This document shows positions 359 through 14,196 of a stretch of DNA of 64,000 nucleotides, piece after piece. The notes under the pieces are model-generated. The model saw nothing but the letters and a program-made list of their open reading frames with translations. It was not told the DNA's origin and did no database searches. The stretch's first letter is position 1; each line of letters begins with the position of its first letter. The position numbers and the translations under genes were made by a program. Location: positions 124,001 through 188,000 of the IMG/VR virus record IMGVR_UViG_3300028840_001395. One strand, given 5' to 3'.

Positions 359-934
359 CTAGTGAGATGTCCCGTAGAGCTTGTGCTCCAGAATGTAGTC
401 CATCACCTTGGGCGGAACCATCTTCCGAGCATGACCCAGACCACCTGGGCCGCTCGCCAGGCTCATCCTGATGTCCGTGCTGCTGATGTCAGGGAGGACG
501 AAGGGCATCTGGGACTCCGCACCATCGGGCCGGGGCATCACGAAGAATTCGACCAACCCGGCCAAGTCCTGCCAACGATGCCAGGAGTGCATCACGCCCT
601 CATTGTCCGAGCCGATGATCAGGAACAGGTCGAAGTCCTCCTTCGGGTACTCGACCCGCATCTTCTCCATGAGATCCACCGTGTAGCGGATACGCAGGAG
701 TCGCTCCATCGAGGACACATGGACGTCCGGCATACCACTGAACGCCCGTCCACACATGAAAAGCCGATGGTCGAAGTCGATGAGGTGGGAGTCCTTGTCG
801 AAGGCGTGGTGCCAGCAGGGGTGGACGTAGATGCGGTCAAACTGGCCCATCACCTGGGCGTAGGCCAGGCCCATGACATGAGCGATGTGGGGTGGGTTGA
901 ACCCGCCGCCGAAGAACGCGATACGCTGCTTCAT
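359..934 (-). CDS. nadD: Nicotinate-nucleotide adenylyltransferase
   Basis: FFGGGFNPPHIAH (HxGH-like), IIGSDN and ISSTDIR motifs typical of NadD. Confidence 0.92.
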   Translation of the reverse strand: MKQRIAFFGGGFNPPHIAHVMGLAYAQVMGQFDRIYVHPCWHHAFDKDSHLIDFDHRLFMCGRAFSGMPDVHVSSMERLLRIRYTVDLMEKMRVEYPKEDFDLFLIIGSDNEGVMHSWHRWQDLAGLVEFFVMPRPDGAESQMPFVLPDISSTDIRMSLASGPGGLGHARKMVPPKVMDYILEHKLYGTSH

Positions 935-1152
935 GGTAACACCAACCCCCAGAAGCCAGGAGTGACCCGAGCTACGTCAGGGCAGAGGTAGGCCCGGCAG
1001 ACGGTGGGTCTCTCCTCACGAGGGAGGGTACATCCCGTGTCGCTCCAGTGGCGACAGTAGCCGTCCTTGCGGTAGGGCTTGGCGAAGCCGTAGCCAGGCT
1101 GGTAGCAGCACTCGCCGCATCCCGTGGGGCATTCCCAGTCCTGACCTTCCAT
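931..1152 (-). CDS. Small CxxxCxxCC cysteine-cluster protein (YkgJ-like)
   Basis: CPTGCGECC...CRHW...C...RPTVCRAYLC. Confidence 0.65.
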   Translation of the reverse strand: MEGQDWECPTGCGECCYQPGYGFAKPYRKDGYCRHWSDTGCTLPREERPTVCRAYLCPDVARVTPGFWGLVLP

Positions 1153-1168
1153 CGGGGCCTCCAGTCAC

Positions 1169-1200
1169 CTAGACTACTCTCGCGTGTGCCCGTGTAAGCC
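1169..1200 (-). promoter_or_regulatory. Class I bipartite phage promoter motif
   Basis: GGCTTAC-N14-GAGTAGTCTAG on the minus strand, upstream of the Cys-cluster/nadD pair. Confidence 0.75.
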
Positions 1201-1504
1201 CCTGGATGGTCGCCATCACCCTGCCGGGGATATTCTGCTCGTAGGGGCGATAGTCCCAGGCGAGCATCTTGGTGAGCCTCTCCTGGTCGAAGGTGTCCTC
1301 GGAGCCTTCCGGATTCCACTCCTGGTCGAAGATGACCAGCATGGTCTTGATGAACTTCCGCAGGTAGTGGTGAACCGAAGGATCTCCGGAGATCTTCCTG
1401 AACACGTCCATGTACTCTACGGGAATGGCGTGGAAGCCCCGCCAGGTGAACGGGAGGAACGCTTGACTACCATCGGGGAGGGTCTTCTGAATCAGATGGT
1501 GCAT
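1169..1504 (-). CDS. Hypothetical protein
   Basis: Co-oriented, fits operon spacing, GC3-biased codons. Confidence 0.6.
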   Translation of the reverse strand: MHHLIQKTLPDGSQAFLPFTWRGFHAIPVEYMDVFRKISGDPSVHHYLRKFIKTMLVIFDQEWNPEGSEDTFDQERLTKMLAWDYRPYEQNIPGRVMATIQGLTRAHARVV

Positions 1505-1517
1505 CCTCGATGCCCTT

Positions 1518-1958
1518 TCACATCAACTTCAAGTGTCCCGTGATCTCATCGATGGCCTTGGGGTGTGCCGGACCGATGGCCACACAGGTCTTGGTAGGTA
1601 CCCCGTGGAACTCCGTCGCCCCCGAATCAGTGATGACTGCCGTGGGGAATCCGAGTTTCTGGGACTCCTCCGCCAGGGCGAGAAGCTCCTCCTCGTCCTT
1701 GCAGCCCACGACGACCTTGGTGAACAGCCCCTTGATCCAGCCCTCCAACCCCGCCGTGTCCAGCATGACGATGAGACAGGCCATCTCCTTGGTCGTCCTG
1801 CCGGGATTCTGAGGGTCGGCATCGACCTCGACCATCCCGAACTCTCCCCGGTCAAGCAGCACCTTCATCGAGGCATGGGCCACCTGGGCGGCAATCTTGC
1901 CCTTCCGCATCTTGAGATCCTTGCGGACGACGATCACCTGCTTCATCTCATCGGCCAT
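1518..1958 (-). CDS. pth2: Peptidyl-tRNA hydrolase, Pth2 family
   Basis: KQVIVVRKDLKMRKGKIAAQVAHAS, TKVVV, ITDSGATE, TCVAIGP...IDEITGHLKL; start reassigned to ATG at 1958. Confidence 0.92.
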   Translation of the reverse strand: MADEMKQVIVVRKDLKMRKGKIAAQVAHASMKVLLDRGEFGMVEVDADPQNPGRTTKEMACLIVMLDTAGLEGWIKGLFTKVVVGCKDEEELLALAEESQKLGFPTAVITDSGATEFHGVPTKTCVAIGPAHPKAIDEITGHLKLM

Positions 1959-1959
1959 G

Positions 1960-2652
1960 CTACACCTCGAAGAAGATGCCGTCCTTCTGGAGTCGGCGGT
2001 ACGTGGGGCAGTCGAAGCGGTAGAGCTTCGGAGGACGCCGCCCGATGCTCTTGGTCTCCCCGGTCTCGACCAGGACACCCAGGCGGAGCACCCGGCGGCG
2101 GAAGTTCCGCTTGTCGAGCTTGCGGTCGAGGATGATCTCGTACACTCGCTGCAACTCGGTCAGGGTGAACTCCTCGGGCAACAGGTCGATGCCCAGCGGC
2201 TGCCAGCGGACCTTGGAACGAAGCCGCTCCAGGCCCACCGCCAGAATCTCGGCATGGTCGAAGGCCAGCGCACCCTGGATCTTGTCGGCGGGTGCCCAGG
2301 TGACGCCCTGGGCGTCGCTGCCAGGTTGAAGCTGCATCCCTGTCCTGACCAGCGCCAGGTAGGCGGTCGAGATGTAGTGCCCTCGGGGATCCCGCTTGGG
2401 CTTGCCGAACGTGTAGAGCTGTTCCAGGTAGGAGAGCTTGAGCCCTGTCTCCTCCTGAAGTTCCCGCTTGACCGCTGCATCGAGGTCTTCATCCGGCTCC
2501 ACATGGCCCCCAGGGAGCGCCAGGAGGCCCTTGAACGGCTCCTCTCCCCTTTGGATGAGCAAGACCTGGAGTTCCTCGAAGTCGGCGCTCACACCGAAGA
2601 CCACGGCGTCCACGGTGTTGACGGCTCGCGGGTACTCGTAGGTGTAGCTCAC
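1960..2652 (-). CDS. nrtR: NrtR-family Nudix + winged-helix regulator
   Basis: Intact Nudix box GHVEPDEDLDAAVKRELQEETGL; AFDHAEIL; C-terminal FTLTELQRVYEIILDRKLDKRNFRRRVL wHTH. Confidence 0.9.
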   Translation of the reverse strand: MSYTYEYPRAVNTVDAVVFGVSADFEELQVLLIQRGEEPFKGLLALPGGHVEPDEDLDAAVKRELQEETGLKLSYLEQLYTFGKPKRDPRGHYISTAYLALVRTGMQLQPGSDAQGVTWAPADKIQGALAFDHAEILAVGLERLRSKVRWQPLGIDLLPEEFTLTELQRVYEIILDRKLDKRNFRRRVLRLGVLVETGETKSIGRRPPKLYRFDCPTYRRLQKDGIFFEV

Positions 2653-3302
2653 GATGCCCCCCGGACAGGCACCTTGCGAATGGCACCCTCCTCGTTGCGC
2701 TCGACGGCCACGTAGACGACCTCGGTGGCGACCACGGCGACGGGAGCCGCTTCACCATCGCGGGAGAACTCCACTTCGACCTTGATGGTCAGGGAGGTGT
2801 TGCCGATCTTCACCAGCGTCGTGTAGAGCGTCACCACGTCACCGATAGACACGGGATGGTTGAACTCGATGCCGTTCATGAAGCGGGTGGCAACATCATG
2901 CTTCGTGTGCTTGCGGGCCTCCACGGCTCCTGCCAGATCGATCTCCGCGAGGATAGCTCCGCCGAATACCTCGCCCCGGTGGTTGGTGTCCTTGGGCAGC
3001 AGGATGCGCCGGATGGCCAGATTCCGCCGAGGGGGCTCCTCCTTGAGCTTCTGTGGCTCATCGTGCATCTGGCACTCGGAGACGTGGGTGAGCATGTGCC
3101 GGTATCCCTCCCGTTCGGGGTCAGGTTCGGTGAGGGTGGTGGCCCAGCACCGACAGTCCGGGTCGCCACAGTCGAGGTCGCAGTAGTCGAAGGCATCCTC
3201 GTCCTCGGGCTGGATCTCGACCCGCAGGCGGTTGGAGTTCTTGATGTAGCCGCTGCCCGGAGAGGGCCACACCCAGTCGCCCGGCTTTCGGCGCTTACTC
3301 AT
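2649..3302 (-). CDS. Hotdog-fold acyl-CoA thioesterase (YciA-like) with N-terminal Cys/His-rich extension
   Basis: PKDTNHRGEVFGGAILAEIDLAG motif and PVSIGDVV; start at MSKRRKPG. Confidence 0.8.
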   Translation of the reverse strand: MSKRRKPGDWVWPSPGSGYIKNSNRLRVEIQPEDEDAFDYCDLDCGDPDCRCWATTLTEPDPEREGYRHMLTHVSECQMHDEPQKLKEEPPRRNLAIRRILLPKDTNHRGEVFGGAILAEIDLAGAVEARKHTKHDVATRFMNGIEFNHPVSIGDVVTLYTTLVKIGNTSLTIKVEVEFSRDGEAAPVAVVATEVVYVAVERNEEGAIRKVPVRGAS

Positions 3303-3342
3303 CTTCGACCTCCAGTTCCTCAATGTACCCCTCGGGGCCACC

Positions 3343-3543
3343 CTAGTCGTCCCGGAAGGTGGCGACGAACTCGCCCTCCATCGTGACCTCGTAGCCATGC
3401 TCGTCGTGGATGGTGTCGGGGAAGATCAGCCCTGCGAACTCACCGTGGAGAACCTCGACCGCGACCTGGCGGTGACGGCTGGCCTTGATCACGTCCGAGG
3501 GTGTGTCCGGCTCGTGTCGGTATCTGGCGACGTAGATCTTCAT
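3343..3543 (-). CDS. Hypothetical protein (66 aa, MKIYVARY...)
   Basis: ATGA overlap with upstream gene; GGAG RBS. Confidence 0.5.
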   Translation of the reverse strand: MKIYVARYRHEPDTPSDVIKASRHRQVAVEVLHGEFAGLIFPDTIHDEHGYEVTMEGEFVATFRDD

Positions 3544-3776
3544 TCGGGAAGCTCCTTCTCCGACCAGATGATGAACGGCCCCTGTCCTGACCCCAAGATC
3601 ATGTAGCCGTGCTCGGGATGCTTGGCCAACCCAGTCGGCCCACTGGGGCCGTCCATCTCCATCCGGAGAATCGCGCGGCCCTCTTCGGGCATCTTGGGGA
3701 GATGCTGTCTCCACTGAGACAGCGGGATGAGGTGCTTCTCGGCCTCGAAGGCGATCTTGCTCAGGTGGTGACTCAC
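3540..3776 (-). CDS. Hypothetical protein
   Basis: Coupled overlaps on both sides. Confidence 0.55.
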   Translation of the reverse strand: MSHHLSKIAFEAEKHLIPLSQWRQHLPKMPEEGRAILRMEMDGPSGPTGLAKHPEHGYMILGSGQGPFIIWSEKELPE

Positions 3777-5518
3777 TTGCTCCCCTTCATCTTGGCCCAG
3801 TAGAGCTTGTCGCCCTGGGCGATGACGAGCTTCGACCCGCTCTTGTAGAGCCGCATGTCGCCCGAGAGCGCCGGGTCATCGATCTCCTTGACCGACGCCG
3901 AATCCTTCCGGGAGGAGCACAGCTCCAGCTTGGAATCCTCGTTGAGACAGACACACACGCCCGAAGCGAGCACCACGAAGTTGAGACCCCCGTGCTGGAT
4001 GTCCTCGACCAGGCGCACGTCGTAGCTGTAGTCACGGGGGTCGAAGCGGAACACCAGCCGGTCATACTGGCCCTTCTTCTCCCCGATGACCATCAGCACT
4101 CCACCGCTGTCCTCATCGGTGCTGTCGAACTTGGCGTCGAGGACGCGGTAGTCGTCCAACTCCTTCATCCGCACCTGGTAGGACTGATCCCCCCGCAGGA
4201 TGGAGACGTGAACGGCCCCGAGGAGTTTCTGGACGACCACACCGGGGTAGAGCCGGGCCGCGTGCTCCAACGTCTGGGCGACCTTGTTGGAGGAGGCGAT
4301 GATATCTGGCCCGGCCTCGTTGAGCACGATGCGATACACGGCGTCCCGAGTCCGCATGTAGAGGTTGCCCCCACCCGACGACACCTCCAGGGCTTCCAGG
4401 TTGAATCCGAGGTACTTGCGATCCTTCACGCTATAGAGCTTGAGCGTCCCGCCCGAGTGGTCAGCCAGCACGGGCCATGCACACCAGGTAAAGCCCAGGC
4501 CAGAGAGCTTTTTCGGGGCGTCTCCACACCGCTTGCCCGGATGGCCCAGGTTGTACCAGATGCCCTGGTCGGTGACAGCGACCAGGGCAGAGGTCGAGTG
4601 CTGGAAGCTGTCCATGCTCCAGAAGCCTCGGACGGTGCCCTTGTGTCCCAGGTCGTCCAGTTCGACCATCTCGATGATGTCCGACCCGGCCACGGCCTTG
4701 ACCTTCGGGACGATGACGGCCACGACTCCGAACTCGCCCGGAGGAGGCAGGCGCTTGCCCTGCTTGAACAGCGCCTCGTACCACTGCCGGTAGGCGGAGG
4801 GGATGACGCTGAAGTCGTAGGCCACCGCAGGCACCTTGACGTTCGGGTCGAACACCGAGATGCCCCGCTGCATCCGGGTCTCCAATCCCTTCGCCGTGGG
4901 GTGCTTGCCCTTGTAGGGGTGGATGCCGGTGAACATCTGGAAGCTGACGATGGCGAAGCTGAACCAGTCGGACAGTTCCGAGAAGTCTGCGGGCTCGACC
5001 GACCAGTCCCGGATCGAGGGCATGATCGCAGAGGCGGGGAAGCTCCGCGTCTGGTAGCTGGCGGCGTCGATGCCGTAGACATCATCGAACTTCTTGCCGA
5101 CGAGGAAGTTCATCTCATTGCCGTCCACCAGGAGCACGTCGGCCTTGTGGACATTGGATACCAGGTCTTGTAGCTTGCGAACAAGCTCCCGCATCCTGTC
5201 GTGGGTCAGGCCCTCTCGCTCTCGGAAGACACGGGGGAACAACTGGCACAACGCCCAGGCGTCCCTGATGAAGCGCATGGTGTAGCCGATGGGCTTCTTC
5301 TTGGTGTCGGTCAGGAGTCCCAACGGGCGAATCACCCGGTCATCCTTGATGGCTGACAGTTCGTGGATCTTGCCCAGCGGGGGCATCGTCTTGGGGTCGT
5401 GGTAGACCTTGAATGACCGCTGGCCACGGGCGTACACGACGCCTTCGCCGCCCTCTCCGACGTAGTTCGCCTGCGTCAGCGTGACCGGCTTGGACTCGCC
5501 CTTGACGTAGACCTTCAT
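3773..5518 (-). CDS. Ser/Thr-type protein kinase (TerY-P triad kinase, YegI-like) with beta-rich C-terminal domain
   Basis: GEGGEGVVY P-loop, FKVYH lysine, DGNEMNFLV catalytic loop, IDAASYQ, SDWFSFAI, GIHPY. Confidence 0.85.
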   Translation of the reverse strand: MKVYVKGESKPVTLTQANYVGEGGEGVVYARGQRSFKVYHDPKTMPPLGKIHELSAIKDDRVIRPLGLLTDTKKKPIGYTMRFIRDAWALCQLFPRVFREREGLTHDRMRELVRKLQDLVSNVHKADVLLVDGNEMNFLVGKKFDDVYGIDAASYQTRSFPASAIMPSIRDWSVEPADFSELSDWFSFAIVSFQMFTGIHPYKGKHPTAKGLETRMQRGISVFDPNVKVPAVAYDFSVIPSAYRQWYEALFKQGKRLPPPGEFGVVAVIVPKVKAVAGSDIIEMVELDDLGHKGTVRGFWSMDSFQHSTSALVAVTDQGIWYNLGHPGKRCGDAPKKLSGLGFTWCAWPVLADHSGGTLKLYSVKDRKYLGFNLEALEVSSGGGNLYMRTRDAVYRIVLNEAGPDIIASSNKVAQTLEHAARLYPGVVVQKLLGAVHVSILRGDQSYQVRMKELDDYRVLDAKFDSTDEDSGGVLMVIGEKKGQYDRLVFRFDPRDYSYDVRLVEDIQHGGLNFVVLASGVCVCLNEDSKLELCSSRKDSASVKEIDDPALSGDMRLYKSGSKLVIAQGDKLYWAKMKGSK

Positions 5519-5772
5519 TTCACCACCCACAGCCAGCCGACGATGCGGCTTTTCTGGTCACCCCTCATGGAATGGAACAGCACGAAGGGATCACCTTTCC
5601 ATCCTTTGCATTTGGGAGGAAGGTCACGTTCGTAGTGGTATCTTTCCACCACGAACCCACAACAGGACTGCGGCTCGGACTCCACCACGAGGATGCACTG
5701 GTTGGGCTGTCCCTCTGGAAGCTCCTCGATGGGGTGAAGGAGAGCCTTGAAGTCGGGATGGAGGGTCTTCAT
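5515..5772 (-). CDS. Hypothetical protein
   Basis: Coupled overlaps, co-oriented. Confidence 0.55.
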   Translation of the reverse strand: MKTLHPDFKALLHPIEELPEGQPNQCILVVESEPQSCCGFVVERYHYERDLPPKCKGWKGDPFVLFHSMRGDQKSRIVGWLWVVK

Positions 5773-6098
5773 CCTGGTGCTCCCGGTGCGAACATCCCCA
5801 TGCCGTAGGTGCCGAAGAACATCTGGGCAAGCTCGCTCTCACGCTTCTCGTCCCGCTTGCCGTCGTTGAGGGCCTCCACGATGAGGCGGATGGCGAGGAG
5901 GAACCGAGGCTGGACCGGCATCTCGTCCGGGATGGCGCTCATGCAGTCCTTGACGGCAGCCACGGCCCAGACGAACTTGCCCGTCCACACCATGTCCTCA
6001 TCCATCGAGCCGTCATCCCAGGCGGAGTCCCAGACGATGCGGAAGCCACCGATGCGCTCGCCTCGCAGTTTGACCTCGATGATGCGTGTGTCAGCCAT
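5769..6098 (-). CDS. Hypothetical protein
   Basis: Coupled, co-oriented. Confidence 0.6.
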   Translation of the reverse strand: MADTRIIEVKLRGERIGGFRIVWDSAWDDGSMDEDMVWTGKFVWAVAAVKDCMSAIPDEMPVQPRFLLAIRLIVEALNDGKRDEKRESELAQMFFGTYGMGMFAPGAPG

Positions 6099-6365
6099 CT
6101 AGCTCCCCCAGTACTCGGCACGGAGCATCTTCTCCGTGAGTGCGTATCCCTTGTTGCACCTCGTCCCGACCAGGTACACCCCATCTTCCAGGGTCCAGCC
6201 GGGCGCACCGAAGTTCGGATGCCGCTGGGCGTGTTCGTGGCCGGAGCAGACGATGATCTTGCCCGATTCGTGGACGAGCAGGCAGTAGTCCTTGAGAAGC
6301 AGGTAGGCCAGGTGCTCCTGATCTTCCAGGGCTGCCTCTGCGATCTCGTCGGCCAGCGTACTCAC
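6099..6365 (-). CDS. Hypothetical protein
   Basis: GTGA overlap with the PP2C gene. Confidence 0.6.
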   Translation of the reverse strand: MSTLADEIAEAALEDQEHLAYLLLKDYCLLVHESGKIIVCSGHEHAQRHPNFGAPGWTLEDGVYLVGTRCNKGYALTEKMLRAEYWGS

Positions 6366-7267
6366 GCATCCCCCAGGTAGATCGCACCGACGCCCAGGTC
6401 ATCGTAGTGCTGCCAGTGGTTCTTCACGCAGAAGCGGGTCAGGAAGCTCTTGCACCTCCGGGCCATAAACTCCCCCGTAAAGCTCTTGATGTCCGTCAAA
6501 TGACCCAGAACCCAGGCCATCGGGATGCGCTCCATCGTCTCGGCGTCCTGGAAGCTCTGAACGCCATCGGAGAACACCGCCACCAGGTCGTACAGCTTGG
6601 GGTCGAAGGTCATGACGAAGGGGAAGTTGTCGTAGGTGACCGTCTGACCCGGTTCACCCTCGATAATCACGGGCCAGTCCCAGTGGTTGTCCGGCTCGGC
6701 CCCCTCCCGCAGCTTCTCCAGGGAATCCCACCGACGCAAGATGCGACCCTCATGCGTCCCACTCGCCTCCATCGTCGCCTCGATGGCCTCCTTGTAGACC
6801 AGGAGCCGGTCCGGGTTGAGCAGGTAGGACAGATAGCTCGGGGCGTTCTGGCAGTCGATCTCGACCACCTCGACCTGTCCCGTCTCCCGCTGCCGGGCAG
6901 CTATCACCCCATCCCCGCAGGTGATGACCTGCACGGAGCCGTCATCCTGCTGGTAGGCCGTCAAGAGGGTGGCGTCAAGACTTTGACGCTTGAGGCTCTG
7001 GGGCAGCTTGTCCAGGGCGTGCCAGATGAGCCAGTCCACCTTCTCGGGCAGCCGGTCACCCAGAATCTCGATCCCCGTGACAGCGGCCATCGTCAGGAGC
7101 CGGGAGCCGAAGTCCGTGTCCGGCGAGCCGGAGCAGCCGTCCGAGACGATGGCGAAGGTGCGGGCACCCTCGTCCACCCCGAACCGGGCCGGGGTCCGAC
7201 CAGAGCGGGCGTAGTCCTGGCAGACCGCGTGAGCCTTGCCCCGAGTGAAGAAGGCATCCGAGTGCAT
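6362..7267 (-). CDS. PP2C-family protein phosphatase (TerY-P triad, YegK-like)
   Basis: AIVSDGCSG, CGDG, AVFSDGV, DDLGVGAI metal-binding motifs. Confidence 0.88.
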   Translation of the reverse strand: MHSDAFFTRGKAHAVCQDYARSGRTPARFGVDEGARTFAIVSDGCSGSPDTDFGSRLLTMAAVTGIEILGDRLPEKVDWLIWHALDKLPQSLKRQSLDATLLTAYQQDDGSVQVITCGDGVIAARQRETGQVEVVEIDCQNAPSYLSYLLNPDRLLVYKEAIEATMEASGTHEGRILRRWDSLEKLREGAEPDNHWDWPVIIEGEPGQTVTYDNFPFVMTFDPKLYDLVAVFSDGVQSFQDAETMERIPMAWVLGHLTDIKSFTGEFMARRCKSFLTRFCVKNHWQHYDDLGVGAIYLGDA

Positions 7268-7279
7268 CGTAGGCCCCCG

Positions 7280-8020
7280 TCAGAAGGTCAACGACTGCGA
7301 CGGCCCGCCCGTGCCGAGCGCCTGGCTCTGAGACGAGAAGGACTTGGAGATGAAACCGCCCAGCTTGGCCAGCTCCTTCTCGGTCGCGTTGGCGATGGCC
7401 ACGTACTGCTGGAACCCCGCCTCGTCCCGGAAGTCCTCCAGGTAGGAGTTGAGGCCCGTGCTGGCGTCCGTGTTCACGCCGATGAGGACCGGCATGATGG
7501 ACTCCAGGGCCTCCTTGCGGCGGGCCTCGGCCAGGGCGTCCTTGACCATCTTGCGGCTGCACTTGCCCTTGTTGTGCTCCCCGTCCGTGATGACGAACAC
7601 GCAGGCGTTGCAGTCGAAGTCGTTGTCCACGAGGGTCTGGCCGTACTGCATGGCCGAGTGGACGGCCTGGTAGGTCGCGTCGTGCAGCGCCGTCAGCCCA
7701 CCCTCGGGCAGGCAGTCGTCGTAGTCGGCCTCGTTGCAGTCCGCCAGCGGCTTGAAGCCGTGGAACTCCTGCACCTTGTCATCGAAGAAGGTCACGCGGA
7801 GCATCATGTTGTCCGCACGGGGAGACCGGCGGCAGGCCTTGACGACCTCCTTGAGCGCGGCCTCGATCTCCTTGCGGAAACCCCAGACCGAGCCGGACAC
7901 GTCCACGACGATCTCGCCCAGCGTGTACTCGGTCGCGCCGAGTTCCTCGATGCGGGTGCCGGAGAACTTGAAGTTGGTGCCACCGATCTGGTGGGTCTCC
8001 ATGTCAGCGAGCTTGGGCAT
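7280..8020 (-). CDS. vWA-domain protein (TerY-like)
   Basis: MIDAS DVSGS, GGLTALHDA, FVITDG; directly upstream of PP2C and kinase. Confidence 0.85.
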   Translation of the reverse strand: MPKLADMETHQIGGTNFKFSGTRIEELGATEYTLGEIVVDVSGSVWGFRKEIEAALKEVVKACRRSPRADNMMLRVTFFDDKVQEFHGFKPLADCNEADYDDCLPEGGLTALHDATYQAVHSAMQYGQTLVDNDFDCNACVFVITDGEHNKGKCSRKMVKDALAEARRKEALESIMPVLIGVNTDASTGLNSYLEDFRDEAGFQQYVAIANATEKELAKLGGFISKSFSSQSQALGTGGPSQSLTF

Positions 8021-8032
8021 CTTGCCCTCCCT

Positions 8033-8887
8033 TCAGGCCAGGAAGTTGACGGTGGTGTCGGTCTTCATCCCCTTGGCGGTCATCTCCTTCACGAAGTCGT
8101 CGCCCAGGGACTCGAAGCCGCCGACGCTGCTGCTGGCGTCCGTGAGCAGGCACAGCTTCTCGACGTACTTGGGGTCGGAGAAGCAGTCCGCGATGTCCCG
8201 CGCCGTGTTGGCCATGCAGTGCGAGAGCGCCTCGCCCGTCATGCCGATGATGTCGGCCTCCTCCAGCGTCTGGATGAGCTTGGTGTTGACCTGCGACTCG
8301 GGGTCGTTCGGGTCGGGCACCTCGGCCTTGACGCCGGAGAAGTGCTCCGTCCAGGGGTTGCTGCCCTTGGTCACGTAGTCGGTCTGGGCGAAGTTGCGCT
8401 CCTCCCAGCCCTGGAGCGCCTGGAACACGACGGGCACGATGTTGTGGCCCCAGGAGCCGATGAGGCAGTGCGGGGGCCAGATGCAGTGCGGGTAGCGCCC
8501 ACCCGCCGTCAGGGCCTTGAGGTAGTCCCGCGAGCGGTCGAGGAAGCTCGGCAGGTGGGTGGTGAACTCCTGGTCGGTCGGGGCCATGTTGTTCGTCGGG
8601 TCGAGGGCAACGATCTTGTCACCGTCCATCCCGAGCAGCGTGAAGGGCGCGGGCGGGTTGCCCGCCGAGTCCTTCCACCACTTCGGGTGGGAGATGTCGA
8701 TCAGCCGGTGGCTGTCGAGGGTGACGTGGATGTCATCGAACTTGTCGCCCACGCGGTCGATCATCGCCGCGAGTCGCGTCATGTCCTCGTCCGCGCCGGG
8801 CACCACGAGTGCCCCCTGGTTGCCGTGTCCGTCGTCCGCGATGCAGAAGTCGTTCTGCGGGTCGATGATCAAGAGCTGGATGTTCAT
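8033..8887 (-). CDS. pncA: Nicotinamidase (isochorismatase/cysteine hydrolase family)
   Basis: LLIIDPQNDF, TLDSH...HP..W, WPPHC...WG, KG, GEALSHC catalytic Cys. Confidence 0.88.
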   Translation of the reverse strand: MNIQLLIIDPQNDFCIADDGHGNQGALVVPGADEDMTRLAAMIDRVGDKFDDIHVTLDSHRLIDISHPKWWKDSAGNPPAPFTLLGMDGDKIVALDPTNNMAPTDQEFTTHLPSFLDRSRDYLKALTAGGRYPHCIWPPHCLIGSWGHNIVPVVFQALQGWEERNFAQTDYVTKGSNPWTEHFSGVKAEVPDPNDPESQVNTKLIQTLEEADIIGMTGEALSHCMANTARDIADCFSDPKYVEKLCLLTDASSSVGGFESLGDDFVKEMTAKGMKTDTTVNFLA

Positions 8888-8923
8888 GGTCTCCTCCTCA
8901 CCCCTCCGTTGGGGCGCTTGGTT

Positions 8924-10000
8924 TCACTCGGGCACCTGGGGAAGCTCATCGGTCAGGAAGCCCGCCTTGACCAGTTCCGCTCGCGTCCCCAGCATCGGGA
9001 TGTTCGGGTTCGCCTTGTGTCTCGTCTGCGCCTCGGCCCGGCGGGCAGCCTTGAGGAAGTCCAGCACGAACGCCTTGGGCACCGGCTGCCAGAGGGCGCT
9101 CTTCACCGCGAAGCCTTCGAGGGACTTCCAATCCGGCTCCGTGAAATCGAACAGCACCTTGTCCACCTGGACGAGGCTGCTGTAGCGCACATCGTAGTAG
9201 GGGATCTCCACATCGAGGAACCGGCTCACCCGCTCGATGGTGCCGATACGCATGATGTCGCCCGTGTCCGGGTTGATGCGCCCGTAGGTGAAGGGCATCC
9301 CGAGCCAGTCGAGAAGCTCCTTCTCGTCCGAGTGCCCATCCCCGGTCCCCCACAGGTCGGGCGACGGGGTGGCCTCGATGATGGGCCGGACGACATCGTA
9401 GATGCCCAGCTTGTTGCCCAGGTAGAAGGCAAGCTGGTACACCTCGGTCTTGCTCAGCATGGCGAGCGGATTGGTGTCCACCTCGCCGTCGCCGCCCTTC
9501 TGGTAGAAGCGCAGCCAGCGATCCTCGCACTCGTTGCCGGTCCCGTGCCGGATGCCCCCGCCCATGATGCGGTTGTAGGCACGACCGATGGGTGCCCGCA
9601 GGGTCGAGCGGATGCTTCCGAGGATGGTCGGGTCGGCATCCATGCGTTCCTTGATCTCGGTGCCGATGTCGGTGCCGAAGTGGGCGTCCACGAGCGACGT
9701 GATCACCTCGTCACGGACGTTGTTGAAGATGTCGTTGAAGTGTCCGATGGCCAGAGGCACCTGGAGAGCCTCGCACAGCTCCCGCGCACGGTCGGTCTGC
9801 TGGAAGCTCGTGTGGATGATGGTGTGGTCGAAGATGCAGTTCTCCGGCCCCAGCGCCTTCACGAGCAACATCGTCATCACGGCGGAGTCGATGCCCCCGG
9901 AGATGTCGAGCTGCGCCTTCGGAACCCCGAACTCGTCGTGATACTCACGGATGGACTGCATCCGGTCACGAGCGAGTCCCTTGGCATCAATGACAGGCAT
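8924..10000 (-). CDS. nadE: NH3-dependent NAD+ synthetase (single domain, no glutaminase)
   Basis: ISGGIDSAV ATP-PPase loop, GTGNECED, YQKGGDG, PLAMLSKTEVYQLA, PSPDLW; ATG at 10000 overlaps the pncB stop (TGATG). Confidence 0.9.
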   Translation of the reverse strand: MPVIDAKGLARDRMQSIREYHDEFGVPKAQLDISGGIDSAVMTMLLVKALGPENCIFDHTIIHTSFQQTDRARELCEALQVPLAIGHFNDIFNNVRDEVITSLVDAHFGTDIGTEIKERMDADPTILGSIRSTLRAPIGRAYNRIMGGGIRHGTGNECEDRWLRFYQKGGDGEVDTNPLAMLSKTEVYQLAFYLGNKLGIYDVVRPIIEATPSPDLWGTGDGHSDEKELLDWLGMPFTYGRINPDTGDIMRIGTIERVSRFLDVEIPYYDVRYSSLVQVDKVLFDFTEPDWKSLEGFAVKSALWQPVPKAFVLDFLKAARRAEAQTRHKANPNIPMLGTRAELVKAGFLTDELPQVPE

Positions 10001-11466
10001 CACATACCTCCCCGGACACGCGCCCACTGCTCCTTGATCATGGCCTTCAGCGCCCTCGTGTGTTCCGACACCTCGGGCTTCACGGTGTCCGTGTGGGTCA
10101 GCCGGTGGAAGCCCTTCGGCTCGGACTCCCACTCCTGGCCGACGACGCTGCGCTTGCCATCCTCACTGCGGAAGATCACGGGCTTGCCGGGCAAGGACAT
10201 CTTGCCCTCGACGGCGAACTTCATCACGTCGCGCTCGCCCGTCCGGCACAGCTTGTAGACCGCCGACACGGCGTTCCGGGTGAACTTGTGCGGGGAGGGG
10301 TCGCAGACGAGGAAGCCGCCAGAGCCGTAGCCCGACTGCTCGGGAGTGATGCCCAGCGACTCGCAGAGCACCTCCTGCGCTCGCGCCTTGAGGACGTTGA
10401 TTCCGTCCATGAACATGTAGAAGGGATTGACGTGTTCCTCGGCCTCGGCCTGGACGTACTCGCGGAGCTGAGCCTCCTGGTCGCCCGAGTCGAAGCGGAC
10501 ACCGTGCTGGATGTCCGGGCGTTCCTTCATCGCCTGGACGGCGGCGGGGATGCCGACCTCCATCGCGTCGAAGGTGTCGAACAGGTAGGAGGGCCGCTGC
10601 GGGCGCATGTCCCGGATGGCCCGGAAGGCGTCCAGGTCGTTGCCCCACCGCTGCTGATGCTCGTGGCCCGTGGTGCCGACCGGCACCATCCCCATCTGCT
10701 TCGCGCCCCAGACGTTCGATGTCCGGGTGATGCCCGCCTCCTTGCAGGCGGACAGGGCGATCTCGTGCATCTGGAGGCAGGTCGCGCCTCGCATCCCGAC
10801 CTCGAAGATGCGGTCGCCGCCGACGATGTTGACCAGCCCCTTGGCGTTGTGGAGCACCTTCATGAAGTAGTCGTCCTGCTGGACGGTGATGTCCCGGTCA
10901 TCCTCGCGCTCGATGGCCTCGCAGGTGAGCCGGACGATCTCGGCCTCATCCTCGCAGGTGCAGCGGAACTCACGGGTGTCGTTGGTCAGCACCTCGGTTG
11001 CGATCTGGATGGGGAAGTGCAGGGCGATGGCCAGCGGCTCCAGCCACGACACCAGGAACGAGGGGCCGGTGATGGTGGCGATGGGTTCCCGTGCCATGAC
11101 CCAGGTGCCAGGAGGCGCACAGGTGACCTCGATGTCCTGCTTGAGCGCGACCTCCATCGACTGCGACATGCCGTAGCCGAACATCCGGAGGTAGTCGTTC
11201 TCACCGGGCCAGATCTCGTCCGGCAGCAGCTCGCGGATGAGCAGGTTGAGGTCGAAGGGGATGTAGTGGGTGCCACGTCGGAAGGACAGGTAGAACGTCT
11301 CGCGCCGGAGGGGGAAGCCCGCCTGGGCCATCGAGAACTTGTAGCCGTCCGACATCAGCACGGACGGATCCTTGCCGTTGAGCATCCGCCCGGCGACATC
11401 GAACTCGATGCACTGGTCGGTTCCGACCCTCGCCAGTCTGCTCTGTCTCTTTGCTCTCTCGTTCAC
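10000..11466 (-). CDS. pncB: Nicotinate phosphoribosyltransferase
   Basis: DGYKFSM, EVGMRG, TSNV, GTTGHE, DTFD, GVRFDSGD, VYKL, K..LPGK; adjacent pncA/nadE favour a nicotinate (not nicotinamide) PRTase. Confidence 0.85.
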   Translation of the reverse strand: MNERAKRQSRLARVGTDQCIEFDVAGRMLNGKDPSVLMSDGYKFSMAQAGFPLRRETFYLSFRRGTHYIPFDLNLLIRELLPDEIWPGENDYLRMFGYGMSQSMEVALKQDIEVTCAPPGTWVMAREPIATITGPSFLVSWLEPLAIALHFPIQIATEVLTNDTREFRCTCEDEAEIVRLTCEAIEREDDRDITVQQDDYFMKVLHNAKGLVNIVGGDRIFEVGMRGATCLQMHEIALSACKEAGITRTSNVWGAKQMGMVPVGTTGHEHQQRWGNDLDAFRAIRDMRPQRPSYLFDTFDAMEVGIPAAVQAMKERPDIQHGVRFDSGDQEAQLREYVQAEAEEHVNPFYMFMDGINVLKARAQEVLCESLGITPEQSGYGSGGFLVCDPSPHKFTRNAVSAVYKLCRTGERDVMKFAVEGKMSLPGKPVIFRSEDGKRSVVGQEWESEPKGFHRLTHTDTVKPEVSEHTRALKAMIKEQWARVRGGM

Positions 11467-11468
11467 CT

Positions 11469-11511
11469 TTAGTGTCCCTCCGACACCTTTATAGTGTCAC
11501 CCGCACACTTT
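11469..11511. promoter_or_regulatory. Two tandem NrtR-box-like palindromes
   Basis: ttaGTGTC-cctcc-GACACctt (11469-11489) and ataGTGTC-acccg-CACACttt (11491-11511); each has a GT-N7-AC core; centres 22 bp apart. Confidence 0.7.
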
Positions 11512-11516
11512 GTCAA
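11488..11516 (-). promoter_or_regulatory. Host sigma70-type promoter of the pncB operon
   Basis: TTGACA-N17-TATAAA on the minus strand. Confidence 0.8.
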
Positions 11517-11566: not shown

Positions 11567-12172
11567 TGAAATTCCCGGCTCCCCTCCCATCCTCGGAGGG
11601 TCAGGCAATCCGTTGTGTTTCCAGATGAGTCGCATCAGTCGATCCTCGGCGTCCGCGACAACGGCCCAGGTCATGGCCACCGAGGACACCCCCTCTTTCT
11701 GGACGACTGCGGTGAGGAGCTTCCGGGCGTTCTCCTTCGCGTGACCCTGGAACAGGTTCCACAGGCTGCCATGCTCTCGTCCGGCGTCCATGAGGCGGTT
11801 GTATCGTTCGTGGCCTCGCAGGTAGCCGATGACGTGGACCAGGAGGTAGCGCCGGGGGTTGTCGCTGGGACGCTCGACACCAAGCTCCTTGTAGAGCCAG
11901 GTGAAGTAGAACGAGTGCTGTATCGACACCGTGGCCAGGCCGAGAGGCACCCTCTCGCTGATGAGCCTGTATTGCTCATCGTGAACGTCGCTGATCTGGA
12001 GGCACTGCAACATGAACTCGGGGTACACGCCCCTGATGTTGTTCAGCACCTCCTTCATGTAGATGCACGCTTCGCCCTGACGCTTGAGGTAGGCGTCCAT
12101 GTCGAGATTCTGTGCCCACTCGGGCGGGGACTTGGCGGGGATGTTGAAGTCGAGGTCTTTCATCAGAGGCAT
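11540..12172 (-). CDS. Hypothetical protein (210 aa)
   Basis: Co-oriented, overlaps the end of the CoaB-like gene. Confidence 0.65.
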   Translation of the reverse strand: MPLMKDLDFNIPAKSPPEWAQNLDMDAYLKRQGEACIYMKEVLNNIRGVYPEFMLQCLQISDVHDEQYRLISERVPLGLATVSIQHSFYFTWLYKELGVERPSDNPRRYLLVHVIGYLRGHERYNRLMDAGREHGSLWNLFQGHAKENARKLLTAVVQKEGVSSVAMTWAVVADAEDRLMRLIWKHNGLPDPPRMGGEPGISGLSVFPRE

Positions 12173-13287: not shown

Positions 13288-13946
13288 TTCGCAACCTCCA
13301 GATGCTTCGGCTTGGTGCAGACCCAGCGCAGCCCCCGCCCGTGCTCCTCCAAGAGCACCTTGAATCCCGCCAGGCAGAGGAGGCGGCGGATGTCCTGAGC
13401 CGGGTGATACCGGAAGTGGGTCACGTCCCAGCCCGTCCCCAGCCGCCACTGGAGATGGACGACATGCTCGCCCCAGGCGTAGTGGCACTCGAAGTATCGG
13501 GAATCCCTGAACTTGTAGGACTTCCATGAGTAGGGCCGGGGCTGGATGAACGTGCTGAACACGAACTGACCGCCGGGCTGCAGGACGCGGAAGACCGCCG
13601 GAATGACGAGCGATGGATTGAGGTAGCCCATCGCCTGTCGGCAGACGACCACATCAAAGGTGTCACGCGGGAAGTAGATGGCCAGGTTCTCGGCCCGGCC
13701 CCGGACGGTCTCGATCTCCTTGTGCTTGCAGCGAGGGTTGATATCGAACAGCGTGATGTCTGAGGGATTCTGGCGACCGGCTTCCCAGCCTCGGCAGTGA
13801 GCGGCCAGCGACACGGCTCCCGTTCCCCCGCAGAGGTCGAGCAGCTTGAGGCCCGGCTCGTAGTCCACCAGGTCGAGCAGGTCGTGGGGCTGTTGCAGCC
13901 AGGGGGCGTAGATGTCGGCGTACTTCTCGGTGGTGCAGTTCAGCAA
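13284..13946 (-). CDS. Class I SAM-dependent methyltransferase
   Basis: LLDLCGGTG motif I, FDIN, FDVVVCRQAM, VLQPGG. Confidence 0.85.
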   Translation of the reverse strand: MLNCTTEKYADIYAPWLQQPHDLLDLVDYEPGLKLLDLCGGTGAVSLAAHCRGWEAGRQNPSDITLFDINPRCKHKEIETVRGRAENLAIYFPRDTFDVVVCRQAMGYLNPSLVIPAVFRVLQPGGQFVFSTFIQPRPYSWKSYKFRDSRYFECHYAWGEHVVHLQWRLGTGWDVTHFRYHPAQDIRRLLCLAGFKVLLEEHGRGLRWVCTKPKHLEVAK

Positions 13947-14140: not shown

Positions 14141-14196
14141 CTGTCTATCTCCTTCCCCTGCCCGAAGTCGGGCGGGGAGGTCAGCACCAAGTCATG

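What the first reader, a model, noticed from the sequence alone, without database searches (positions are those of the whole stretch)
359..11516. Phage-borne complete deamidating NAD+ salvage pathway, apparently ADP-ribose-inducible through its own NrtR
Seen: pncB, nadE, pncA, nrtR and nadD are all on one strand. Two tandem GT-N7-AC palindromes (11469-11511) overlap a TTGACA-N17-TATAAA promoter directly in front of pncB. Established: NrtR repressors bind ~21-bp GT-N7-AC palindromes and release on binding ADP-ribose. SIR2/TIR-type antiphage effectors cleave NAD+ to ADP-ribose + nicotinamide. The described phage NAD+ reconstitution routes NARP1 and NARP2 are two-enzyme amidated routes. Inference: this is a four-step Nam->NA->NaMN->NaAD->NAD+ route wired as a sensor-response circuit, so the product of host NAD+ destruction would switch on phage NAD+ rebuilding. 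The intact Nudix box may also hydrolyse ADPR to ribose-5-P for PRPP supply. I know of no characterised phage counter-defence of this design, but could not search for one.
Basis: partly seen in the sequence, partly recalled or inferred. Interest (0 to 1): 0.92.

Follow-up and report, generated by a model that had tools for sequence, protein, structure and literature searches.

The report
NrtR-controlled NAD+ salvage operon, huge phage
A 436-kb phage carries an 11-kb operon that should rebuild NAD+ from nicotinamide under its own ADP-ribose-sensing repressor; phage NAD+ pathways of this type are already reported, but the phage-borne repressor with its operators and an embedded nicotinamidase–vWA–phosphatase–kinase core are not.

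Summary
On the minus strand, 11466→359, lie a NAPRTase-like gene, nadE, a nicotinamidase-like gene, nrtR and nadD. Two GTGT-N7-ACAC palindromes, the only two in 64 kb, overlap a TTGACA-N17-TATAAA promoter. The contig is an IMG/VR huge phage (435,804 bp) with rIIA/rIIB.

Comparison adds three points.
1. The operators match the TTAGTGT-N7-ACACTAA motif of the closest bacterial NrtR operons. They recur, with diverged spacers, in two related phage contigs.
2. The nicotinamidase-like gene forms a fixed quartet with vWA, PP2C and a Ser/Thr-kinase-like gene. This quartet occurs in over 50 bacterial species and in other huge phages, often with NrtR or its operator but rarely with pncB or nadE. It is the conserved core of the operon.
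3. The pathway is not new in phages. Bacillus phage G is annotated with the enzyme genes plus a Nudix protein that I find to be NrtR-like, and "NAD-jumbo phages" with Preiss-Handler clusters were published in 2024.

What remains new is phage-encoded, NrtR-operator-controlled regulation and the uncharacterised quartet. ADP-ribose induction and counter-defence are inferred, not shown. I rate this a new variant of a known kind, of moderate interest.

The parts
11511..11516 (-). -35 hexamer TTGACA
   Evidence: Read. The pattern TTGACA-N16-18-TANNNW occurs 3 times in 64 kb against 0.46 expected. It is conserved in relative L002.
11488..11493 (-). -10 hexamer TATAAA, 17 nt after the -35
   Evidence: It lacks the final T, so the scan did not list it. 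The relative L002 has TATCCT at the same place.
11491..11511 (.). NrtR operator O1, a 21-bp site with core GTGT-N7-ACAC at 11494-11508, lying in the promoter spacer
   Evidence: Half-sites are conserved and the N7 spacer has diverged in L002. It matches TTAGTGT-N7-ACACTAA of Opitutus terrae pncB and of L011.
11469..11489 (.). NrtR operator O2, core 11472-11486, covering the likely transcription start and the ribosome-binding site
   Evidence: Spacing to O1 is 22 bp here and 23 bp in L002, L014 and L007.
10000..11466 (-). Divergent NAPRTase-like type II phosphoribosyltransferase (PncB'), 488 aa
   Evidence: Pfam PF04095 23.5 bits. Only NAPRTase models hit in NCBIfam, best TIGR01513 at 2.9e-25 and below cutoff. 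AF2 model pLDDT 92.5. Best PDB match is E. faecalis NAPRTase at 2.9e-22; NAPRTases give TM 0.57-0.71 against 0.33 for NAMPT. 53% identical to a bacterial protein encoded next to nadE and nrtR. The N-terminal 27 codons are coding, by synonymous changes against L002.
8924..10000 (-). NH3-type NAD+ synthetase (NadE), about 358 aa; its start overlaps the PRTase stop
   Evidence: NAD_synthase 64.3 bits. SGGIDS PP-loop and no glutaminase domain. Relatives are 351-375 aa.
8033..8887 (-). Nicotinamidase-like amidase (PncA'), 284 aa, first gene of the conserved quartet
   Evidence: HMM evidence is weak. AF2 pLDDT 94. The top 24 PDB fold matches are all nicotinamidases. D9, K174, C224 and D58, H60, H140 are invariant in 32 homologues.
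7280..8020 (-). vWA protein with an intact MIDAS motif (DVSGS)
   Evidence: VWA_2 E 3.5e-4, below cutoff. Motif read. 60-92% identical in relatives.
6362..7267 (-). PP2C-type protein phosphatase
   Evidence: PP2C_2 32.3 bits. Syntenic in all relatives.
5515..6365 (-). Three small ORFs (88, 109 and 85 aa) of unknown function
   Evidence: Coding-type GC3. Conserved only in the close relative L002/L003.
3773..5530 (-). Ser/Thr-protein-kinase-like protein with a C-terminal domain of about 330 aa of unknown fold
   Evidence: Motifs GEGGEG, K41, D136-x4-N141, D155 and D188-W are invariant. Weak kinase hits. A homologue carries a weak Pfam Pkinase hit. 43% identical to the bacterial L007 protein.
2649..3776 (-). 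Two small ORFs and a YciA-like hotdog acyl-CoA thioesterase (2649-3398)
   Evidence: 4HBT 43.4 bits and NF007970 80.6 bits. Thioesterase retained in L014 and L015.
1960..2652 (-). NrtR: Nudix effector domain with an intact Nudix box, plus a winged-helix DNA-binding domain
   Evidence: 55-66% identical to bacterial NrtRs.
1518..1958 (-). Pth2-type peptidyl-tRNA hydrolase
   Evidence: PTH2 112 bits. Follows nrtR in L004-L006.
931..1504 (-). Two small ORFs (111 and 73 aa) of unknown function
   Evidence: The 73-aa ORF is conserved in L004-L006.
359..934 (-). NadD-type nicotinate-mononucleotide adenylyltransferase, 191 aa
   Evidence: CTP_transf_like 44.4 bits; TIGR00482 99.4 bits against cutoff 112. 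HIAH and SSTDIR motifs. 83-85% identical in close relatives, 37-38% in L014 and L015.

Best explanation
This is an operon of about 11 kb and 17 genes in an uncultivated huge phage. It is transcribed from one sigma-70-type promoter that carries two NrtR operators.

The operon is a mosaic of bacterial NrtR-regulon parts:
- a divergent NAPRTase and an ammonia-dependent NAD+ synthetase at the 5' end;
- a conserved quartet: nicotinamidase-like amidase, vWA protein, PP2C phosphatase and Ser/Thr-kinase-like protein;
- a thioesterase;
- the NrtR repressor itself;
- Pth2;
- NadD at the 3' end.

Inferred mechanism:
1. NrtR dimers sit on O1 (promoter spacer) and O2 (start site and ribosome-binding site) and block host RNA polymerase.
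2. ADP-ribose, released when NAD+ is cleaved, binds the Nudix domain and frees the DNA.
3. The enzymes then convert nicotinamide to nicotinate, NaMN, NaAD and NAD+.
4. The Nudix box is intact, so NrtR may also hydrolyse ADP-ribose.

nrtR is inside its own operon, so the circuit is a negative autoregulatory homeostat. It is a pre-set switch only if a host NrtR recognises the same sites.

What is shown: gene identities by homology and fold, operator identity by comparison, and viral origin. What is inferred: ligand response, enzyme specificities, any counter-defence benefit, and the role of the vWA-PP2C-kinase triad.
For: Genes and motifs.

Operators:
- They are the only two GTGT-N7-ACAC sites in 64 kb, and they are adjacent on the promoter.
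- Half-sites are kept and spacers changed in the relative L002.
- Tandem sites over TTGACA-N17-TATACA lie before the PRTase gene of phage contig L014, which also encodes NrtR.
- The same motif stands before pncB and nrtR in Opitutus terrae, before the PRTase'-nadE-nrtR operon in L011, and before the quartet-nrtR operon in L007.
- Exact sites lie within 160 nt upstream of the PncA-like gene in 10 of 51 bacterial loci, against 0.0038 expected per window.

Family properties: a GT-N7-AC core and ADPR-dependent release in EMSA (PMC2330246).

Operon structure: overlapping or closely spaced genes and no convincing minus-strand terminator.

Synteny in huge-phage contigs of 90-528 kb.

Phage origin.
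Against: - There is no experimental datum.
- The PRTase, PncA-like, NadE and NadD proteins all fall below the NCBIfam equivalog cutoffs, so substrate specificity is open.
- The NrtR is as similar in sequence to the arabinose-sensing AraR (5bs6) as to the ADPR-binding Shewanella NrtR (3gz5). The effector is inferred from context and from the Nudix box.
- A catalytically active Nudix domain would destroy its own inducer.
- The -10 hexamer lacks the conserved final T, and read-through from upstream genes on the same strand is not excluded.
- Relatives L013 and L015 keep the enzymes but show no such operators and no NrtR in the fetched range. Regulation is therefore dispensable.
- The PncA-like gene travels with the triad far more often than with pncB or nadE, so salvage may not be its primary role.
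- Only 64 of 436 kb were seen.
Confidence: 0.6

Rival explanations
1. The anatomy is the same, but the purpose is metabolic housekeeping rather than counter-defence. The operon keeps NAD+ available for the phage's own NAD+-consuming enzymes. The ADP-ribose that NrtR senses comes from phage or host ADP-ribose turnover, for example through the nearby macro-domain enzyme.
For: [quoted passage not shown] A macro-domain protein resembling O-acetyl-ADP-ribose deacetylase lies 2.7 kb upstream; in L014 it sits next to nrtR. Negative autoregulation fits homeostasis. In bacteria this same regulon is ordinary NAD+ homeostasis.
Against: NARP1, NARP2 and NARP3 show that phage NAD+ synthesis does counter NAD+-depleting defences. 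The two roles are not exclusive, and no NAD+-consuming enzyme was identified in the window itself.
Confidence: 0.3
2. The functional unit is the NrtR-controlled quartet of nicotinamidase-like amidase, vWA, PP2C and Ser/Thr kinase. It would be an ADP-ribose-triggered phospho-signalling or conflict module of unknown output. The NAD+ enzymes are accessory additions in some phages.
For: The quartet keeps a fixed order in at least 55 of 80 bacterial loci across several phyla. NrtR is adjacent in 26 of them, PRTase' in 3 and NadE in 2. Operators are enriched upstream. Published huge phages LR745208.1 and LR756511.1 carry the quartet alone. The architecture resembles TerY-P triads, which have been reported as stand-alone defence systems and as predicted phospho-switches (PMC11090510). 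L007 lies next to a HepT/MNT toxin-antitoxin pair.
Against: The vWA and PP2C proteins hit no PADLOC model, and the kinase-like protein gave only marginal PD-T4-6 matches. No effector domain was recognised. In this phage and four relatives, PRTase' and NadE precede the quartet and, where the contig reaches that far, NadD follows it, which argues for pathway coupling. The bacterial locus L011 links a PncA-like fragment with PRTase', nadE and nrtR without the triad.
Confidence: 0.2
3. The PRTase is not a nicotinate enzyme. Like Namat or Nampt, it uses nicotinamide with PRPP or with ADPR-pyrophosphate. The route would then be amidated, and NadE and the PncA-like protein would serve something else.
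For: The family is very divergent, scoring 89 bits against a cutoff of 297. In relatives L014 and L015 a Prs-like gene sits directly after it. That PRTase-plus-Prs-like adjacency is the hallmark of NARP1.
Against: All sequence and fold evidence ranks NAPRTases above NAMPTs. There is no NAMPT_N domain. The gene co-occurs consistently with NadE, which only the deamidated route needs. No Prs-like or Nampt-like gene was found in this window.
Confidence: 0.1
4. The contig is a bacterial chromosome or megaplasmid fragment misfiled as viral, and the operon is an ordinary bacterial NrtR regulon.
For: Every part has close bacterial homologues, 43-66% identical. No virion gene was seen in the 64-kb window.
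Against: The contig is listed in IMG/VR. rIIA and rIIB are adjacent, with E 1e-98 and 2.6e-62. Most ORFs hit no family, there is no tRNA and no housekeeping gene was seen. The same rIIB-rIIA...DFP-methyltransferase-operon synteny occurs on a 528-kb contig. Quartet homologues occur in GenBank 'uncultured phage' genomes of 485 and 595 kb.
Confidence: 0.05

Closest known systems
Bacterial NrtR regulons for salvage I and universal NAD+ synthesis (Rodionov et al. 2008, PMC2330246), e.g. Opitutus terrae pncB-nadE-x-nrtR-pncA
   Same: Nudix-wHTH repressor. 21-bp palindromic operators with a GT-N7-AC core on the promoter. Regulated pncB, nadE, pncA and nadD, with nrtR inside the operon. The operator motif TTAGTGT-N7-ACACTAA is shared.
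   Different: It is carried by a phage. The enzymes are divergent versions: NH3-type NadE instead of the glutamine-dependent form, a 284-aa PncA-like protein with an insertion of about 80 aa, and a PRTase only 26% identical to that of O. terrae. A vWA-PP2C-kinase triad and other genes are interleaved.
Preiss-Handler gene clusters of 'NAD-jumbo phages' (PMC11662467) and the Bacillus phage G region gp273-gp283
   Same: Huge phages encoding pncB, nadD, nadE and pncA as a cluster. Phage G also has a Nudix protein that is NrtR-like by my comparison, 37% identical, at the head of the region.
   Different: The enzymes are only distantly related; the phage G NAPRTase is 27% identical. That paper does not mention NrtR, and I found no published phage operator. 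Upstream of phage G gp273 I saw only one half-site. Phage G was not seen to carry the triad.
NARP1, NARP2 and NARP3 phage NAD+ reconstitution pathways
   Same: Phage-encoded rebuilding of NAD+ from its breakdown products or precursors. All three have been shown to defeat NAD+-depleting defences.
   Different: Those are two-gene amidated routes: Adps+Namat, Nampt+Nmnat, and PnuC+NadR. None of their defining proteins was found in the window. The present route has four steps, runs via nicotinate, and comes with a dedicated repressor. It is untested.
TerY-P triads (vWA, PP2C, Ser/Thr kinase; Anantharaman 2012; Gao 2020; summarised in PMC11090510)
   Same: The same three domain types, in the same order, as a tight cassette.
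   Different: The vWA and PP2C proteins hit no PADLOC model, and the kinase-like protein gave only marginal PD-T4-6 matches. The kinase has a different C-terminal domain of about 330 aa, with no recognised OB-fold or zinc ribbon. The triad is always preceded by a nicotinamidase-like gene and is often under NrtR control.
NrtR next to NadM-Nudix and Nampt in megaphage LR756504.1
   Same: A phage-encoded NrtR homologue, 43% identical, beside phage NAD+ salvage genes. A GTGT-N7-ACAC site lies directly before the first gene.
   Different: There the regulated genes are of the amidated NARP2 type. The record carries no annotation, and I found no publication describing this arrangement.

Membership tests
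NrtR transcriptional regulators | N-terminal Nudix-like domain fused to a C-terminal winged-helix DNA-binding domain | tested here: met
   PF00293 77.5 bits and PF21906 92.2 bits, both above cutoff. PDB 3gz5 NrtR E 1.2e-36 over the full length.
NrtR transcriptional regulators | Palindromic operators of about 21 bp with a GT-N7-AC core upstream of regulated genes | tested here: met
   Two sites on the operon promoter, unique in 64 kb. They are conserved in relatives and match the motif of homologous bacterial operons.
NrtR transcriptional regulators | DNA binding relieved by ADP-ribose | not testable with these tools
   Inferred from the family. The Nudix box is intact. The protein is equally similar to the arabinose-sensing AraR. 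The NF050029 equivalog scores 188 bits against a cutoff of 400.
Nicotinamidase (PncA/Pnc1) | Isochorismatase-like fold closest to nicotinamidases | tested here: met
   Model pLDDT 94. The top 24 PDB matches are nicotinamidases, TM to target 0.72-0.82 for all but one.
Nicotinamidase (PncA/Pnc1) | Asp-Lys-Cys catalytic triad and Asp-His-His metal site | tested here: met
   D9, K174, C224 and D58, H60, H140 are invariant in 32 homologues. They align with PncA and Pnc1 motifs. The assignment of roles rests on my knowledge of PncA structures.
Nicotinamidase (PncA/Pnc1) | Passes curated family thresholds | tested here: not met
   PF00857 17.3 bits against 27; NF008623 20 bits against 174. I therefore call it nicotinamidase-like, not PncA.
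Nicotinate phosphoribosyltransferase (PncB) | Type II PRTase fold and family HMM | tested here: met
   PF04095 23.5 bits against 20.8. Fold match to 2f7f at 2.9e-22.
Nicotinate phosphoribosyltransferase (PncB) | Equivalog-level sequence membership and nicotinate specificity | tested here: not met
   Best equivalog TIGR01513 scores 89 bits against 297. The specificity itself cannot be tested here. The conserved His in GTTGHEH aligns with GTHAHS of O. terrae PncB.
NAD+ synthetase (NadE) | PP-loop ATP pyrophosphatase domain of the NAD synthase family | tested here: met
   PF02540 64.3 bits against 21; SGGIDS motif. TIGR00552 is just under its cutoff, 59.7 against 63.65.
NaMN adenylyltransferase (NadD) | HxGH-type and ISSTxxR motifs, and the family HMM | tested here: inconclusive
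   PF01467 44.4 bits. Motifs HIAH and SSTDIR are present. TIGR00482 scores 99.4 against 112.45. NaMN versus NMN preference is not testable here.
NARP1 / NARP2 / NARP3 | Adps plus Namat; Nampt plus Nmnat; or PnuC plus NadR | tested here: not met
   tblastn of Prs-like, Nampt and NadM-Nudix queries against the window found none, apart from the Nudix domain of NrtR. No NAMPT_N domain. PnuC and NadR were not searched directly, and the rest of the genome is unseen.
TerY-P triad | vWA, PP2C and Ser/Thr kinase encoded together | tested here: met
TerY-P triad | Sequence membership in the defence-system models, and the kinase C-terminal OB-fold or zinc ribbon | tested here: not met
   No PADLOC hit for vWA or PP2C. 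The kinase gave only marginal PD-T4-6 hits. The fold of its C-terminal domain was not determined.

The most novel reading that the evidence does not exclude
The conserved core of the operon may be an undescribed ADP-ribose-triggered signalling module: a nicotinamidase-like amidase plus a vWA / PP2C / Ser-Thr-kinase triad under NrtR control. It is shared by many bacterial phyla and by huge phages. In this phage lineage it has been welded to NAPRTase, NadE and NadD. That would make a self-contained circuit that senses NAD+ cleavage and then both rebuilds NAD+ and switches a phosphorylation-dependent response.
Probability: 0.3. Interest if true: 0.8.

Novelty: new variant of a known kind. Interest (0 to 1): 0.55.

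Why it matters
NAD+ depletion is a common end-point of bacterial immunity, and three short phage pathways that undo it are known. If this operon works as read, it would be the first regulated one. The phage would carry the sensor (NrtR with ADP-ribose) as well as the repair enzymes, and would spend PRPP and ATP only when NAD+ is being destroyed.

It would also show that the long deamidating route, seen so far only in annotations, is under selection in huge phages.

Separately, the nicotinamidase-vWA-PP2C-kinase quartet is widespread, uncharacterised and wired to an ADP-ribose sensor in bacteria. That gives a concrete entry point into what TerY-P-like phospho-switches respond to.

Tried and rejected
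- Megablast of 12 kb against 50,697 phage records gave no match, so the lineage has no close sequenced relative there.
- ARAGORN found no tRNA.
- The consensus promoter scan did not list the promoter because its -10 ends in A. I kept the promoter call on the strength of conservation in L002 and L014.
- PADLOC gave no hit for the vWA or PP2C protein and only marginal PD-T4-6 hits for the kinase. I rejected filing the triad as TerY-P.
- I considered starting the PRTase at Met28, because homologues align from there. I rejected this because the 27 upstream codons show synonymous changes against L002.
- I looked for further operators in the window with up to 3 mismatches and found none beyond chance.
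- No operators were found upstream of the PRTase gene in L013 or L015, or in L012. Upstream of phage G gp273 there is only a half-site.
- A Markov simulation of tandem-site probability timed out. I used an analytic estimate instead.
- Canonical PncA, NadE and NadD from O. terrae and phage G do not detect the window genes by tblastn. Only HMMs and folds do.
- Prs versus Adps identity of the Prs-like gene in relatives could not be resolved.
- Literature searches found no paper on a phage-encoded NrtR or on a nicotinamidase-vWA-PP2C-kinase operon. The library is incomplete, so this absence is not proof.

Full report
**1. What is in the sequence**

The window is about 63% G+C. It corresponds to positions 124,001-188,000 of IMG/VR contig UViG_3300028840_001395, which is 435,804 bp long.

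From 11466 down to 359, the minus strand carries a tight string of about 17 genes with overlapping or closely spaced ends. In order they are:
- a NAPRTase-family protein, 10000-11466;
- NAD synthase, 8924-10000. Its true start is Met45 of the long ORF, overlapping the upstream stop. It has an SGGIDS PP-loop and no glutaminase domain;
- a 284-aa isochorismatase-like protein, 8033-8887;
- a vWA protein, 7280-8020;
- a PP2C phosphatase, 6362-7267;
- three small ORFs;
- a 585-aa protein, 3773-5530;
- two small ORFs;
- a YciA-like thioesterase, 2649-3398;
- NrtR, 1960-2652;
- Pth2;
- two small ORFs;
- NadD, 359-934.

Twelve further genes lie between them.

**2. The regulatory site**

Read on the minus strand, the 73-nt gap in front of the first gene holds these elements:
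- TTGACA at 11516-11511;
- a 17-nt spacer;
- TATAAA at 11493-11488;
- GGAGGG at 11481-11476;
- the GTG start at 11466.

Two GTGT-N7-ACAC palindromes lie at 11494-11508 and 11472-11486, 22 bp apart. The first fills the promoter spacer. The second covers the likely start site and the ribosome-binding site.

They are the only two matches to that pattern in 64 kb, where 0.77 are expected. From that density, the chance of a pair within 40 bp is about 4e-4 (my arithmetic; the simulation timed out).

The -10 hexamer lacks the usual final T, which is why the consensus scan did not list it. The nearest relative has TATCCT at the same place.

**3. Is it a phage?**

- The contig is in IMG/VR.
- rIIA (phrog_612, 1e-98) and rIIB (phrog_609, 2.6e-62) are adjacent at 17738-20943, and an ArdC-like gene follows.
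- Most other ORFs hit no family.
- There are no tRNAs.
- Megablast finds no sequenced phage relative.
- The same arrangement, rIIB-rIIA ... DFP-methyltransferase followed by this operon, recurs on a 528-kb contig.
- Parts of the operon recur in GenBank 'uncultured phage' genomes of 485 and 595 kb.

I take viral origin as about 95% likely. No virion gene lies in the window, so full-contig annotation is still needed.

**4. Are the enzymes what they seem?**

*NrtR.* The call is solid. Both Pfam domains score well above threshold, and the protein aligns over its full length to the Shewanella NrtR structure. The Nudix box is intact and is invariant in nine phage and bacterial homologues.

*NadE and NadD.* Both pass Pfam, carry their motifs, and fall just under the TIGRFAM cutoffs.

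*The 'pncA'.* Sequence evidence alone is weak (E 5e-3).
- A 32-sequence alignment shows an invariant Asp9-Lys174-Cys224 triad and an invariant Asp58-His60-His140 set.
- The AlphaFold model has pLDDT 94.
- Its 24 best PDB matches are all nicotinamidases.
- It differs from them by an insertion of about 80 residues.

*The 'pncB'.* This is a divergent family.
- It hits only NAPRTase models, far below equivalog cutoffs.
- Its model has pLDDT 92.5.
- The model matches E. faecalis NAPRTase best (2.9e-22). It superposes on NAPRTases at TM 0.57-0.71 but on NAMPTs at only 0.33.

Context supports the deamidated route. A bacterial homologue 53% identical sits in an operon of PRTase', glutamine-dependent nadE, a PncA-like fragment and nrtR.

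No Prs/Adps-like or Nampt-like gene is in the window.

All four steps from nicotinamide to NAD+ therefore have credible candidates. None has a proven substrate.

**5. Comparative evidence for the operators**

The phage NrtR is 55-66% identical to NrtRs of Myxococcota, Planctomycetota and Verrucomicrobiota.
- In Opitutus terrae the operon is pncB-nadE-x-nrtR-pncA. A perfect TTAGTGT-N7-ACACTAA lies before pncB, and two sites lie before nrtR.
- L011 has TTAGTGT-N7-ACACTAT after a TTGACG.
- A scan with this 21-bp motif finds, in every locus where it finds anything strong, only promoter-proximal sites. In the window it finds only the two known sites.
- In the closest phage relative (NrtR 87% identical), promoter and half-sites are conserved, while 2 and 4 of the 7 spacer bases differ.
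- In a more distant phage contig that encodes NrtR (L014), two GTGT-N7-ACAC sites 23 bp apart overlap TTGACA-N17-TATACA before the PRTase gene.
- Two relatives without a visible nrtR (L013, L015) have no such sites.

This is good evidence that the palindromes are NrtR operators. The GT-N7-AC core and ADPR-dependent release in vitro are established for the family (PMC2330246). Neither is tested for this protein.

**6.

The PncA-like, vWA, PP2C and 585-aa genes are homologous to a bacterial chromosomal cassette that ends in NrtR. Identities are 56%, 60%, 34% and 43%.
- The 585-aa protein has the kinase glycine loop, the catalytic lysine, D-x4-N, a DFG-like Asp and the D-W motif, all invariant.
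- The vWA protein has an intact MIDAS motif.

A scan of one genome per bacterial species found 121 species with the kinase-like gene. Among 80 fetched loci:
- 55-56 have the PncA-like, vWA and PP2C genes in the same order;
- 26 have NrtR adjacent;
- only 3 have the PRTase and only 2 have NadE.

Exact GTGT-N7-ACAC sites lie within 160 nt upstream of the PncA-like gene in 10 of 51 loci, against 0.0038 expected per window.

Two published huge phages carry the quartet alone.

The quartet is therefore the conserved, NrtR-linked core. This phage lineage has added PRTase' and NadE in front of it and NadD behind it.

The triad resembles TerY-P. However, the vWA and PP2C proteins hit no PADLOC model, the kinase-like protein gave only marginal PD-T4-6 matches, and the kinase has a different C-terminal domain. 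Its role here is unknown. I found no paper describing this module.

**7. How it most likely works**

- Host RNA polymerase uses the sigma-70-type promoter.
- NrtR bound at O1 and O2 occludes it.
- ADP-ribose from NAD+ cleavage releases NrtR.
- The enzymes then carry nicotinamide through nicotinate, NaMN and NaAD to NAD+.

nrtR is the thirteenth gene of its own operon, so a fresh infection starts without phage repressor. The circuit is then an autoregulatory homeostat that stays on while ADP-ribose is high. Alternatively, it is pre-repressed if the host's own NrtR recognises the shared motif.

The intact Nudix box suggests that NrtR also hydrolyses ADP-ribose, as the cyanobacterial NuhA does. 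That would feed ribose-5-phosphate but would also damp the signal.

All of this is inference from homology.

**8. Comparison with what is known, and novelty**

- NrtR-controlled pncA/pncB/nadD/nadE operons are textbook in bacteria.
- Phage NAD+ synthesis is known: NARP1, NARP2 and NARP3, all two-gene amidated routes, have been shown to defeat NAD+-depleting defences.
- The deamidated route in phages is already on record. Bacillus phage G is annotated with isochorismatase, NAPRTase, NadD and NAD synthetase beside a Nudix protein. I find that protein to be 37% identical to this NrtR over both domains.
- PMC11662467 reports 174 'NAD-jumbo phages' with complete salvage or Preiss-Handler gene sets, including a pncB-nadD-nadE cluster. 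It does not mention NrtR.
- A survey of viral NAD+/ADPr systems lists only NadV, NadM and NadR for phage NAD+ synthesis. It discusses Nudix-HTH regulators only in host systems.
- Megaphage LR756504.1 has an NrtR homologue next to NadM-Nudix and Nampt, with a GTGT-N7-ACAC site at the first gene. Phage-borne NrtR control of NAD+ genes has therefore arisen more than once.

The new elements are the phage-encoded repressor with identifiable operators and the embedded quartet. I rate the finding a new variant of a known kind, with interest 0.55.

Noticed in passing
window 17738-20943 (-): Adjacent rIIA (717 aa) and rIIB homologues, only about 30% identical to any sequenced phage. They are the clearest phage hallmark in the window.
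   Followed up: partly
window 14197-14757 (-): Macro-domain protein resembling O-acetyl-ADP-ribose deacetylase (155 bits, below cutoff). In relative L014 its homologue (44% identical) sits inside the operon next to nrtR, so it may belong functionally with the ADP-ribose circuit.
   Followed up: partly
window 12163-13527 (-) and 2649-3398 (-): A CoaB/DFP-like phosphopantothenate-cysteine ligase domain lies just upstream of the operon, and a YciA-like acyl-CoA thioesterase lies inside it. This is a second cofactor theme (coenzyme A) beside NAD+. The DFP gene keeps its position in L013 and L015.
   Followed up: no
window 1518-1958 (-): A Pth2 (archaeal/eukaryotic-type) peptidyl-tRNA hydrolase lies directly after nrtR. 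It is conserved in the close relatives L004-L006. Why it is in this operon is unexplained.
   Followed up: no
window 14804-17191 (-): A 795-aa protein hits no Pfam or PHROG family but is 46-55% identical to proteins flanking the same cluster in L014 and L015.
   Followed up: no
window 21350-22594 (-): ArdC-like protein (ArdcN plus the zincin-like MPTase-PolyVal domain; phrog_7245 'anti-restriction'). A homologue also flanks the cluster in L014.
   Followed up: no
L014 7864-8757 and L015 7853-8749: In two related huge-phage contigs a Prs-like gene lies between the PRTase and NadE. This could be plain PRPP supply, or an Adps-like enzyme as in NARP1. It passes the TIGR01251 subfamily cutoff but none of the equivalog cutoffs, so the question stays open.
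   Followed up: partly
L017 (LR756504.1, 636-kb phage) 11992-16668: An NrtR homologue, then a NadM-Nudix-like gene and a Nampt gene, with GTGTataatgtACAC immediately before the first of them. This appears to be an NrtR-controlled NARP2-type cluster in a published but unannotated megaphage.
   Followed up: partly
L020-L099 (bacterial genomes): The quartet of PncA-like, vWA, PP2C and kinase-like genes is common in Armatimonadota, Acidobacteriota, Myxococcota, Desulfobacterota and sulfur-oxidising Gammaproteobacteria. Many loci have NrtR-type operators upstream even when nrtR is not adjacent.
   Followed up: partly
window 26181-26209 (-) and 35857-35885 (-): These are the only other TTGACA-N16-18-TANNNW promoter-like sites in the window (3 found against 0.46 expected). 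Sigma-70-type promoters seem rare in this phage.
   Followed up: no
window 55196-56470 (-) and 28807-29529 (+): A WLM/YgjP-type metallopeptidase domain, and a weak PRA-isomerase-like domain, among otherwise family-less ORFs.
   Followed up: no
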